Positions 51,629 through 52,141 of a stretch of 64,000 bases of DNA are shown one piece after another. The position numbers were made by a program, and so were the translations under genes. Where the stretch lies: positions 62,001 to 126,000 of the IMG/VR virus record IMGVR_UViG_3300009158_000031, one strand, 5' to 3'. The notes beneath the pieces were generated by a model, which had not been told where the DNA came from, ran no database searches, and was given only the letters and a program-made list of their open reading frames with translations. Numbering within the stretch: the stretch's first letter is position 1; each line of letters opens with the position of its first letter.

Positions 51629-52141
51629 ATGCTAGCATATCCTCCTAAACCTACAGCAATTCTTCCACATGAATCCAAGATAGAGAATTACATAATTCAA
51701 CCTAAATGGCGTGGATGGCGAATTGCAATACATAAAAATAAATCATGGACAAGGACTGGTAATTCAATTCCAGTCCAAACTGATTATCCTGAAAAACCTT
51801 ATGAATATCAACTAGATGGAGAAATCATTTCAACGGACAAAGAAGTAGAACATCGAGTTCGTGGTGCAATAAAAAGTGGTCGATATCAAATTCGTATATT
51901 TGACATATATCTACCAGAAAGACCTGATGCTACTATTGAGGAAAGACTTCAAGTTCTTAAATCGGATTTTGGAATTGAAGTAGAAACTCATAGTGCAAAA
52001 ACCGGAAAGGATATTGAATCGCTCTTTAAGATGTTTACTGCTCGTGGAAATGAAGGTTTGGTAATGAAACTTAAGGGATCTAAATATCGAGCATCGCAAA
52101 GTGGAAATGAAATTGATAACAATTGGTCAAAAATCCGTTAA
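51629..52141 (+). CDS. minimal ATP-dependent ligase/nucleotidyltransferase (adenylation domain only)
   Basis: Motif I QPKWRGWR, III LDGEI, IIIa IFDI, IV EGLVMK, V WSKIR; 170 aa, no OB domain. Confidence 0.75.
   Translation: MLAYPPKPTAILPHESKIENYIIQPKWRGWRIAIHKNKSWTRTGNSIPVQTDYPEKPYEYQLDGEIISTDKEVEHRVRGAIKSGRYQIRIFDIYLPERPDATIEERLQVLKSDFGIEVETHSAKTGKDIESLFKMFTARGNEGLVMKLKGSKYRASQSGNEIDNNWSKIR

What the first reader, a model, noticed from the sequence alone, without database searches (positions are those of the whole stretch)
51629..52141. 170-aa ligase-fold enzyme with KWRG in place of KxDG and no OB domain
Seen: motifs I, III, IIIa, IV and V are compressed into 170 aa, the motif I Asp is replaced by Arg, and there is no C-terminal OB fold. 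Known: the motif I Lys is adenylated, while the Asp and the OB domain matter for nick sealing in DNA ligases. Inference: this is unlikely to be a normal DNA ligase. It may be an RNA ligase or an end-adenylating/capping enzyme working with the neighbouring Ro60 RNP.
Basis: partly seen in the sequence, partly recalled or inferred. Interest (0 to 1): 0.6.

Follow-up and report, generated by a model that had tools for sequence, protein, structure and literature searches.

The report
OB-less ligase enzyme with conserved partner
A freshwater jumbo phage encodes a 170-residue protein that is only the catalytic core of an ATP-dependent DNA ligase, and it belongs to a previously unnamed family that nearly always travels with one small unknown partner gene, not with the Ro60 gene next door.

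Summary
ORF 51629-52141 (+) is a 170-aa ATP-dependent-ligase nucleotidyltransferase (NTase) domain. It has motifs I, III, IIIa, IV and V, reads KWRGWR where ligases have KxDGxR, and stops right after motif V. No OB domain was found downstream or anywhere in the 254-kb phage record.

It is not a truncation. The orthologues are 170-171 aa (one is called at 193 aa), all end at the same residue, and dN/dS is about 0.03-0.13. It belongs to a clade of about 33 OB-less clusters whose third motif I residue varies (D 13, R 9, N 9, W 1).

The Ro60 link is not conserved. Relatives at 71-81% identity have no Ro60, and the Ro60 block fills a variable slot between this gene and a 5'-3' exonuclease gene.

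The conserved neighbour is the abutting upstream gene, 51140-51625 (161 aa). Its predicted fold matches no solved structure. It precedes an NTase-only gene in about 20 distinct loci, down to about 30% identity, while every other flanking gene differs.

Best reading: the catalytic subunit of a two-protein ligase or adenylyltransferase, with nucleic-acid binding supplied in trans by the partner. Substrate and chemistry are untested. The phage also has an NAD-dependent LigA and an Rnl5-type RNA ligase.

The parts
51140..51625 (+). Partner gene: 161 aa, uncharacterised family, predicted helical bundle plus a three-stranded sheet with a disordered basic loop at residues 48-63. Its stop codon lies 3 nt before the NTase start codon.
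   Evidence: No Pfam, PHROG, NCBIfam or PADLOC match. AF2 pLDDT is 82. No solved-structure match: Foldseek E above 0.2, VIA Z at most 5. Three unnamed ESM Atlas clusters match at TM 0.70. Homologues down to 30% identity sit directly upstream of NTase-only genes. dN/dS is 0.07-0.21.
51629..52141 (+). NTase-only ligase homologue: 170 aa plus stop, no OB domain.
   Evidence: PF01068 at 34.2 bits. AF2 pLDDT 95.2. Fold matches DNA-ligase NTase domains. Of 20 orthologues, 19 are 170-171 aa (one is called at 193 aa from an upstream start) and all end at NWSKIR. dN/dS is 0.03-0.13.
51704..51721 (+). Motif I, KWRGWR: K26 is the predicted AMP-accepting lysine, and R28 stands where the canonical Asp would be.
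   Evidence: Read directly from the sequence and from the profile alignment to solved ligases. Invariant in orthologues. In the OB-less clade this position is D 13, R 9, N 9, W 1.
51812..51829 (+). Motif III, LDGEII.
   Evidence: E65 is kept in 31 of 32 clade representatives and D63 in only 19 of 32.
51890..51910 (+). Motif IIIa, IRIFDIY.
   Evidence: D92 is kept in 32 of 32.
52052..52069 (+). Motif IV, EGLVMK.
   Evidence: G143 and K147 are kept in 32 of 32; position 142 is E in 28 and D in 3.
52124..52138 (+). Motif V, WSKIR, at the extreme C-terminus. The second Lys of the usual motif is Arg here.
   Evidence: K168 is kept in 29 of 32. The stop codon is at 52139-52141.

Best explanation
The 170-aa protein is the catalytic subunit of a conserved two-gene module. 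It is an ATP-dependent-ligase-type nucleotidyltransferase domain with no OB domain. It probably forms a covalent Lys26-AMP adduct. It probably depends on the product of the abutting upstream gene (51140-51625) for what the OB and DNA-binding domains supply in one-piece ligases: holding the nucleic-acid end or nick, and possibly helping the adenylylation step. The arrangement is comparable to REL1 with KREPA2, or LigD with Ku.

The likeliest role is auxiliary sealing or 5'-adenylylation of broken DNA during phage replication or repair. It is not the main replicative ligase, because the phage has LigA.

Shown: the fold, the motifs, the missing OB domain, the clade, the conserved gene pair and purifying selection. 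Inferred: physical interaction, self-adenylylation, substrate and role.

Arg28 is a subclade trait. In every pair examined it goes with Glu in helix 1 of the partner (...KEAAE[LM]), whereas Asp-type NTases go with Lys/Arg there (...AKRL). This suggests, but does not show, a charge-swapped contact like the Asp275-Arg577 NTase-OB salt bridge of human LigIV.
For: Fold and family:
- All 38 aligned clade members match PF01068 best.

A real, selected, OB-less architecture:
- Tails after motif V are bimodal, 0-32 aa or 71 aa and more.
- 33 of 36 short proteins lie on one side of a branch with SH-aLRT 92.
- dN/dS is about 0.03-0.13.

Catalytic residues are kept across the clade:
- K26 in 30 of 32; E65 in 31 of 32; D92, R106, G143 and K147 in 32 of 32; R42 in 28 with 3 Lys.

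Gene pair:
- The partner lies directly upstream, abutting or overlapping, in L003-L007, L009-L013, L015-L021 and about 20 metagenome loci, down to about 30% partner identity.
- It is the only gene pair shared among five divergent loci.
- A metatranscriptome contig spans the junction, 51137-51790. This shows presence only.

DNA-metabolism neighbours: clamp loader, 5'-3' exonuclease, Fpg, RuvB, UDG, an AAA_23 ATPase.

Precedents from papers:
- NTase-only DraLigB self-adenylylates without an OB domain but joins nothing alone; its authors proposed a missing partner (PMC1997131; PMC5397189).
- REL1 receives its OB fold in trans from KREPA2 (PMC4366279).
- LigIV Asp275 pairs with Arg577 of the OB domain (PMC6035275).

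Charge-swap pattern between NTase and partner.
Against: - No direct evidence of binding. The complex prediction gave no verdict.
- The partner is not an OB fold and shows no homology to ligase OB domains: hhalign probability 0.3%, no fold match.
- The pair is not obligate. The partner occurs without the NTase in a TM6 MAG, in two phage-like contigs and in archaeal MAGs. One NTase of the Asn type has no partner on its 4-kb contig.
- Two clade members have lost the catalytic Lys.
- Mutating the motif I Asp abolishes sealing in Chlorella virus ligase and LigIV, so ligation by an Arg form is uncertain.
- The charge-swap correlation rests on essentially one phylogenetic contrast.
- The substrate is undetermined.
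Confidence: 0.45

Rival explanations
1. RNA ligase or RNA-repair enzyme acting with the neighbouring Ro60, non-coding RNA, SmpB and CCA-adding genes.
For: In this genome the gene is followed by a structured non-coding region, Ro60, SmpB and a PolyA_pol-type nucleotidyltransferase. A non-Asp residue at motif I position 3 and a relaxed motif III Asp are usual in RNA ligases; Rnl2 has His there, and the clade census is. Nine of 38 clade members weakly match PF09414. A distant pair, L009, also lies about 1.4 kb from a CCA-adding enzyme.
Against: Ro60 adjacency is limited to relatives at about 95% identity. It is absent at 71-81% identity and in all distant pairs. A terminator-like hairpin precedes Ro60. 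Profile and fold matches favour DNA ligases by many orders of magnitude. P0001 itself has no RNA-ligase family match. The genome already has an Rnl5 RNA ligase.
Confidence: 0.15
2. An adenylyltransferase that does not seal strands. It stops at enzyme-AMP or at 5'-adenylylation of a nucleic-acid end, or it transfers AMP to another acceptor, possibly the partner protein. It would be DraLigB-like.
For: The nucleotide-binding residues and the Lys nucleophile are kept, while the acidic residues linked to steps 2 and 3 are relaxed. DraLigB forms an AMP adduct but joins nothing in vitro. Chlorella virus D29A and LigIV D275A lose sealing.
Against: R42, the equivalent of LigIV Arg293 and Rnl2 Arg55 that are implicated in adenylyl transfer to the 5' phosphate, is conserved. 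Asp-type and Arg-type members share the same partner and architecture, which argues for one common activity. No alternative acceptor is indicated.
Confidence: 0.2
3. A non-catalytic or conflict-related protein, for example a nucleotide or end binder used against host defence or to modulate a host ligase.
For: Two clade members lack the catalytic Lys. The partner persists alone in some genomes that have only a full-length Lig1-type ligase. The gene sits beside a hypervariable slot.
Against: The window protein and its orthologues keep every catalytic residue under strong purifying selection. No PADLOC match. No defence or anti-defence neighbours recur.
Confidence: 0.1
4. A truncated or decaying remnant of a full-length ligase gene.
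For: It lacks a domain that canonical ligases need.
Against: Dozens of homologues have the same length and the same end, in many contexts. dN/dS is about 0.03-0.13. The family forms a coherent clade.
Confidence: 0.02

Closest known systems
ATP-dependent DNA ligases (Pfam PF01068 NTase domain plus OB domain; Chlorella virus, LigD LigDom, Lig E, ASFV and archaeal Lig1-type enzymes)
   Same: Same NTase fold and the same motifs I, III, IIIa, IV and V. These are the best sequence and structure matches.
   Different: No OB domain or motif VI and no DNA-binding domain. Motif I has Arg instead of Asp. It forms a separate OB-less clade.
Deinococcus radiodurans LigB (DR_B0100), an NTase-only homologue of ATP-dependent ligases
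   Same: Consists of the adenylyltransferase domain only. DraLigB self-adenylylates with ATP but does not join DNA or RNA alone, and a missing partner was proposed (PMC1997131; PMC5397189).
   Different: DraLigB lies in an operon with a polynucleotide kinase and a poly(ADP-ribose) glycohydrolase, not with this partner. The paper says it appears to lack motif V, which is present here. The sequence relationship was not tested; the D. radiodurans control genome did not ring with PF01068.
Trypanosoma brucei RNA editing ligase REL1 with KREPA2
   Same: A ligase catalytic domain that lacks an OB fold in cis and is stimulated by a separate partner protein (PMC4366279).
   Different: REL1 is an Rnl2-type RNA ligase and KREPA2 supplies a true OB fold. 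Here the catalytic domain is of the DNA-ligase type and the partner is not an OB fold.
Bacterial Ku with LigD (NHEJ)
   Same: A DNA-ligase-type NTase paired genetically with a small end-binding accessory protein. The top NCBIfam match is the NHEJ ligase domain TIGR02779, far below its cut-off.
   Different: LigD keeps its OB domain. The partner has no Ku match by sequence or fold.

Membership tests
ATP-dependent DNA ligase (canonical, EC 6.5.1.1) | NTase domain with motifs I, III, IIIa, IV and V | tested here: met
   PF01068 above its cut-off. Profile alignment to solved ligases. Fold match at TMq up to 0.78.
ATP-dependent DNA ligase (canonical, EC 6.5.1.1) | Motif I reads KxDGxR, with the Asp present | tested here: not met
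   The motif is KWRGWR, with Arg28 invariant in 20 orthologues.
ATP-dependent DNA ligase (canonical, EC 6.5.1.1) | C-terminal OB domain carrying motif VI | tested here: not met
   The stop codon follows motif V. No ORF lies downstream. PF04679, PF14743 and an OB-tail profile found nothing in the 254-kb record.
ATP-dependent DNA ligase (canonical, EC 6.5.1.1) | Seals 3'-OH/5'-PO4 nicks in DNA | not testable with these tools
   Needs biochemistry.
OB-less NTase-only clade (unnamed; defined here) | The protein ends within about 30 aa of motif V and starts at a YP[PM]xP segment | tested here: met
   The C-terminal tail is 0 aa and the N-terminus reads YPPKP.
OB-less NTase-only clade (unnamed; defined here) | Groups with the other short proteins, apart from OB-bearing ligases, in a tree of the NTase domain | tested here: met
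   33 of 36 short proteins lie on one side of a branch (SH-aLRT 92). The KxRG subclade of 8 has support 98. This was a quick tree with many long branches.
OB-less NTase-only clade (unnamed; defined here) | A partner-family gene lies immediately upstream | tested here: met
   51140-51625 ends 3 nt before the NTase start. The same arrangement recurs in about 20 distinct loci.
RNA ligases (Rnl1, Rnl2, Rnl3, Rnl5; PF09414, PF09511) | Best profile match to an RNA ligase family, and a family-specific flanking domain | tested here: not met
   P0001 has no RNA-ligase match. RNA ligases rank far below DNA ligases in the PDB profile search: 2vug 1.9e-9 and 5d1o 5e-5 against 3gde 4e-20. There is no flanking domain.
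mRNA capping enzyme guanylyltransferase (PF01331) | Capping-type NTase domain plus an OB domain | tested here: not met
   No PF01331 match for P0001, and only 3 of 38 clade members match weakly. No OB domain.
DraLigB-like NTase-only ligase homologues | Architecture of the adenylyltransferase domain only | tested here: met
   DraLigB is described in PMC1997131.
DraLigB-like NTase-only ligase homologues | Operon with a polynucleotide kinase and a macro/PARG protein; sequence kinship to DR_B0100 | tested here: not met
   The neighbours here are the partner, a clamp loader and an exonuclease.
Ro60/Y RNA ribonucleoprotein accessory factor | Conserved co-occurrence with a Ro60 (TROVE) gene | tested here: not met
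   Ro60 is downstream only in relatives at about 95% identity. It is absent in L006, L007, the contigs of P0019 and P0020, and all distant pairs.

The most novel reading that the evidence does not exclude
A widespread, undescribed two-subunit polynucleotide ligase of phages and some small-genome bacteria. In it, a protein whose predicted fold matches no solved structure replaces the OB domain in trans. It docks on the NTase through a salt bridge at motif I position 3 that has been charge-swapped during evolution: Asp with partner Lys/Arg in one lineage, and Arg28 with partner Glu21 in this one. The contact would mirror the LigIV Asp275-Arg577 NTase-OB contact. Stand-alone partner homologues in archaea and a TM6 bacterium would then be general ligase or DNA-end cofactors.
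Probability: 0.25. Interest if true: 0.75.

Novelty: new variant of a known kind. Interest (0 to 1): 0.58.

Why it matters
Ligases are textbook two-domain enzymes, and the OB domain with motif VI is considered necessary for adenylylation and nick sealing. A selected, recurrent family that has dropped the OB domain and tolerates Asp, Asn or Arg at a residue essential in model ligases shows one of two things. Either the chemistry can be completed another way, most plausibly with the conserved partner, or a ligase core has been turned to a different reaction.

The family gives a defined two-protein system in which to test how OB-domain functions can be supplied in trans. It may explain orphan NTase-only ligases such as DraLigB. 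It could also yield a very small, separable ligase or adenylyltransferase tool.

The finding also corrects a tempting guilt-by-association call with Ro60.

Tried and rejected
- Complex prediction of NTase with partner: no verdict, score 0.28 against a mark of 0.32. This is not evidence either way.
- Partner as an OB domain in trans: a profile comparison with the OB tails of related ligases gave 0.3% probability, and the model is helical with a small sheet. Rejected as homology; functional substitution stays open. A remembered likeness between the partner's N-terminal NRFP(I/V)C and the ligase motif VI RFP segment was therefore not pursued.
- Partner fold searches: Foldseek PDB E above 0.2, VIA-wide Z at most 5, and only unnamed clusters in the Atlas.
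- The partner has no Pfam, PHROG, NCBIfam or PADLOC match.
- Cultured-phage records (INPHARED): no match for P0001, P0050 or the partner homologue P0155.
- Stop-codon read-through fusion: in this window the two ORFs are in the same frame, separated by TAA and TCT, but the frames differ in L006, L007 and L009. Rejected.
- A split OB gene elsewhere in the genome: not found. The record is about 83% complete.
- Rfam found no family for the intergenic RNA. A long-range Y-RNA-like pairing I considered is contradicted by a local hairpin with compensatory changes.
- A pattern scan with the broad NTase alignment failed because no stretch was conserved enough.
- I looked for a third conserved gene in the module and found none.

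Full report
**What is there**

The window is bases 62001-126000 of a 254,393-bp IMG/VR virus record. The record has 33% G+C and CheckV rates it about 83% complete. Nearly all its genes are on the + strand. It recurs in many freshwater and lake metagenomes.

ORF 51629-52141 (+) encodes 170 aa, P0001. It passes Pfam's threshold for the ATP-dependent DNA ligase NTase domain: PF01068 at 34.2 bits against 26.2, covering profile positions 24-203 of 204. It also matches PHROG 114 at E 6e-15.

An AlphaFold2 model built from a 38-sequence alignment is confident, with pLDDT 95.2. All its top Foldseek matches are NTase domains of DNA ligases. A family profile matches solved DNA ligases at E values down to 4e-20, far better than RNA ligases.

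- I: K26-WRGWR
- III: LDGEII
- IIIa: IRIFDIY
- IV: EGLVMK
- V: WSKIR, followed at once by the stop codon

Arg28 replaces the motif I Asp.

**No OB domain**

The 433 nt downstream hold no ORF above 44 aa. The Pfam OB models and a profile of the OB tails of related ligases find nothing in the whole record.

The genome does carry two other ligases. One is a 658-aa NAD-dependent LigA-type ligase. The other is a 335-aa Rnl5-type RNA ligase, with a PHA02142 OB domain and PF09414.

**Not an accident**

A word search found 21 close homologues. Nineteen of the 20 aligned are 170-171 aa (one is called at 193 aa from an upstream start). All end in NWSKIR and all have an invariant KWRGWR. Pairwise dN/dS is 0.03-0.13.

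The exhaustive profile search gave 107 hits. The length of sequence after motif V is bimodal: 0-32 aa, or 71 aa and more, the latter being OB-bearing proteins. In a tree of the NTase domain, 33 of 36 short proteins lie on one side of a branch with SH-aLRT 92. The KxRG proteins form a subclade of 8 with support 98. This was a quick tree with many long branches.

Across 32 representatives of the OB-less clade:

| Position | State |
|---|---|
| K26 (nucleophile) | 30 of 32 |
| E65 | 31 of 32 |
| D92, R106, G143, K147 | 32 of 32 |
| R42 | 28 Arg, 3 Lys |
| Motif I, third residue | D 13, R 9, N 9, W 1 |
| Motif III Asp (D63) | 19 of 32 |

So Arg-for-Asp is one state of a position that is unconstrained in this clade. 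It is not a lone oddity.

From papers: mutation of this Asp abolishes sealing in Chlorella virus ligase and human LigIV. In LigIV it also salt-bridges Arg577 of the OB domain. Rnl2 naturally has His at this position (PMC6035275).

**The Ro60 neighbour**

Ro60 (52575-54164; TROVE domain plus a weak VWA-type match below Pfam's cut-off), SmpB, a winged-helix protein and a PolyA_pol-type nucleotidyltransferase follow the gene here. They also follow it in relatives at about 95% identity.

Relatives at 71-81% identity keep a different order: clamp loader, small ORF, partner, NTase, variable small ORFs, 5'-3' exonuclease, and in two of the contigs Fpg. They have no Ro60. In the window the exonuclease (57658-58929) and Fpg (59387-60205) lie beyond a 5.5-kb block that fills that variable slot.

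The intergenic 433 nt is highly structured (z -4.85) and ends in a strong terminator-like hairpin. More distant pairs sit among unrelated genes. Gene neighbourhood therefore gives no support for cooperation with Ro60.

**The conserved partner**

The upstream ORF 51140-51625 (161 aa) ends 3 nt before the NTase start. Homologues of this protein precede an NTase-only gene in several sets of loci, either abutting it or overlapping it by 4-120 nt:
- L009/L010 and L011/L012, at 36-39% partner identity
- L013, where hhalign gives 99.9% probability and the NTase has a canonical KYDGWR
- the contig of P0042
- IMG/VR loci including L020, at 30% identity
- a 1.1-Mb bacterial MAG, L021
- about 20 metagenome loci

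These are the only two genes shared among five divergent loci. The partner is under purifying selection, with dN/dS 0.07-0.21.

The partner has no family match. Its model (pLDDT 82) shows helices, a three-stranded sheet and a disordered basic loop. It resembles no solved structure. Only unnamed Atlas clusters match it. It is not detectably related to ligase OB domains.

The pairing is strong but not obligate:
- The partner stands alone in a TM6 MAG that is syntenic with L021. That genome's only ligase match is a roughly 590-aa open frame of full-length type.
- It stands alone in two phage-like contigs.
- A more divergent form stands alone in Nitrososphaerales and Thermoplasmata MAGs, among housekeeping genes.
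- One NTase of the Asn type has no partner on its short contig.

**A possible contact**

In every pair examined, Arg-type NTases (K[YWF]RGWR) go with partners whose first helix reads ...K[EKRV][AS]A[EQ][LM] (mostly KEAAE[LM]; two loci have Gln for the Glu). Asp-type NTases (K[YF]DGWR) go with partners that read ...AKRL at the same place.

That is a reciprocal charge swap: partner Glu21 against Lys. It recalls the LigIV Asp-Arg latch. It amounts to about one independent phylogenetic contrast, so it is a hypothesis and not evidence of contact. The complex prediction returned no verdict.

**Interpretation**

The best-supported reading is a two-protein enzyme. One subunit is an OB-less, ligase-type adenylyltransferase. 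The other is the conserved partner, which supplies substrate binding or activation in trans.

Two precedents exist. The NTase-only DraLigB self-adenylylates but joins nothing alone. REL1 receives its OB fold from KREPA2.

A DNA substrate is favoured by the sequence and fold affinities and by the replication and repair neighbours. An RNA substrate, or a reaction that stops at adenylylation, remains possible. I found no description of this family or of its partner in the paper library.

Metatranscriptome contigs cover both genes and bridge their junction. This shows presence in RNA libraries only.

Noticed in passing
window 52142-52574 (core about 52245-52545): A structured non-coding region lies between the NTase gene and Ro60. 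The fold z-score is -4.85, and a 12-bp terminator-like hairpin at 52513-52540 is followed by a T run. The region is conserved in relatives, with 4 compensatory pairs. Contigs from four lake or freshwater metatranscriptome runs begin near 52245-52255; three of them end near 52487-52544 and the fourth runs on to 52712. Their word depth is higher than that of the flanking contigs. No Rfam, tRNA or tmRNA match. It is a candidate Y-RNA-like partner of the phage Ro60.
   Followed up: partly
window 52575-57421: A 5.5-kb block occupies a variable slot. It holds Ro60 (TROVE domain, plus a weak VWA-type match below Pfam's cut-off), SmpB (54216-54656), a winged-helix protein (54755-55066), a short PolyA_pol/CCA-type nucleotidyltransferase (55079-55813) and several small ORFs. 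No tmRNA was detected in the window to go with the phage SmpB.
   Followed up: partly
G000:C1 around 3342-4046 (L008) and L002:1036-2043: The same phage encodes a 658-aa NAD-dependent LigA-type DNA ligase and a 335-aa Rnl5-type RNA ligase (N-terminal PHA02142 OB domain plus PF09414). It therefore has three members of the ligase superfamily.
   Followed up: partly
L022, L023, L024, L026, L061-L070: Stand-alone homologues of the partner occur in a TM6 (Dependentiae) MAG next to what looks, by eye, like an MraY gene. More divergent ones occur in Nitrososphaerales and Thermoplasmata MAGs, with the signatures NRF..., LNRAIFFAAAKRGF and VYKPRRD. None has an NTase-only gene nearby, so the family has a life of its own.
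   Followed up: partly
proteins P0030 and P0106 (OB-less clade): Two clade members have lost the motif I lysine (RFDGWR and CYDGFR). This suggests occasional loss of catalysis, or a role that does not need it.
   Followed up: no
L014:1244-1576: The Asn-type NTase-only gene that lacks a partner on its contig is followed by a 110-aa ORF that looks SSB-like or OB-like by eye. This was not checked.
   Followed up: no
window 47121-48626: A 501-aa protein has a RimK/ATP-grasp domain and a long C-terminal extension. It is conserved in all close relatives, upstream of the clamp loader.
   Followed up: no
L041:1177-1929 and L050:1177-1632: In two contigs closely related to L046, the NTase gene is missing. 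The partner gene is retained, C-terminally extended in L041 and truncated in L050. This shows turnover of the module.
   Followed up: partly
L009:7874-8842 and L013:244-1527: TnpB/OrfB_IS605-like genes lie within a few kb of the module in two unrelated contigs. This may be coincidence.
   Followed up: no
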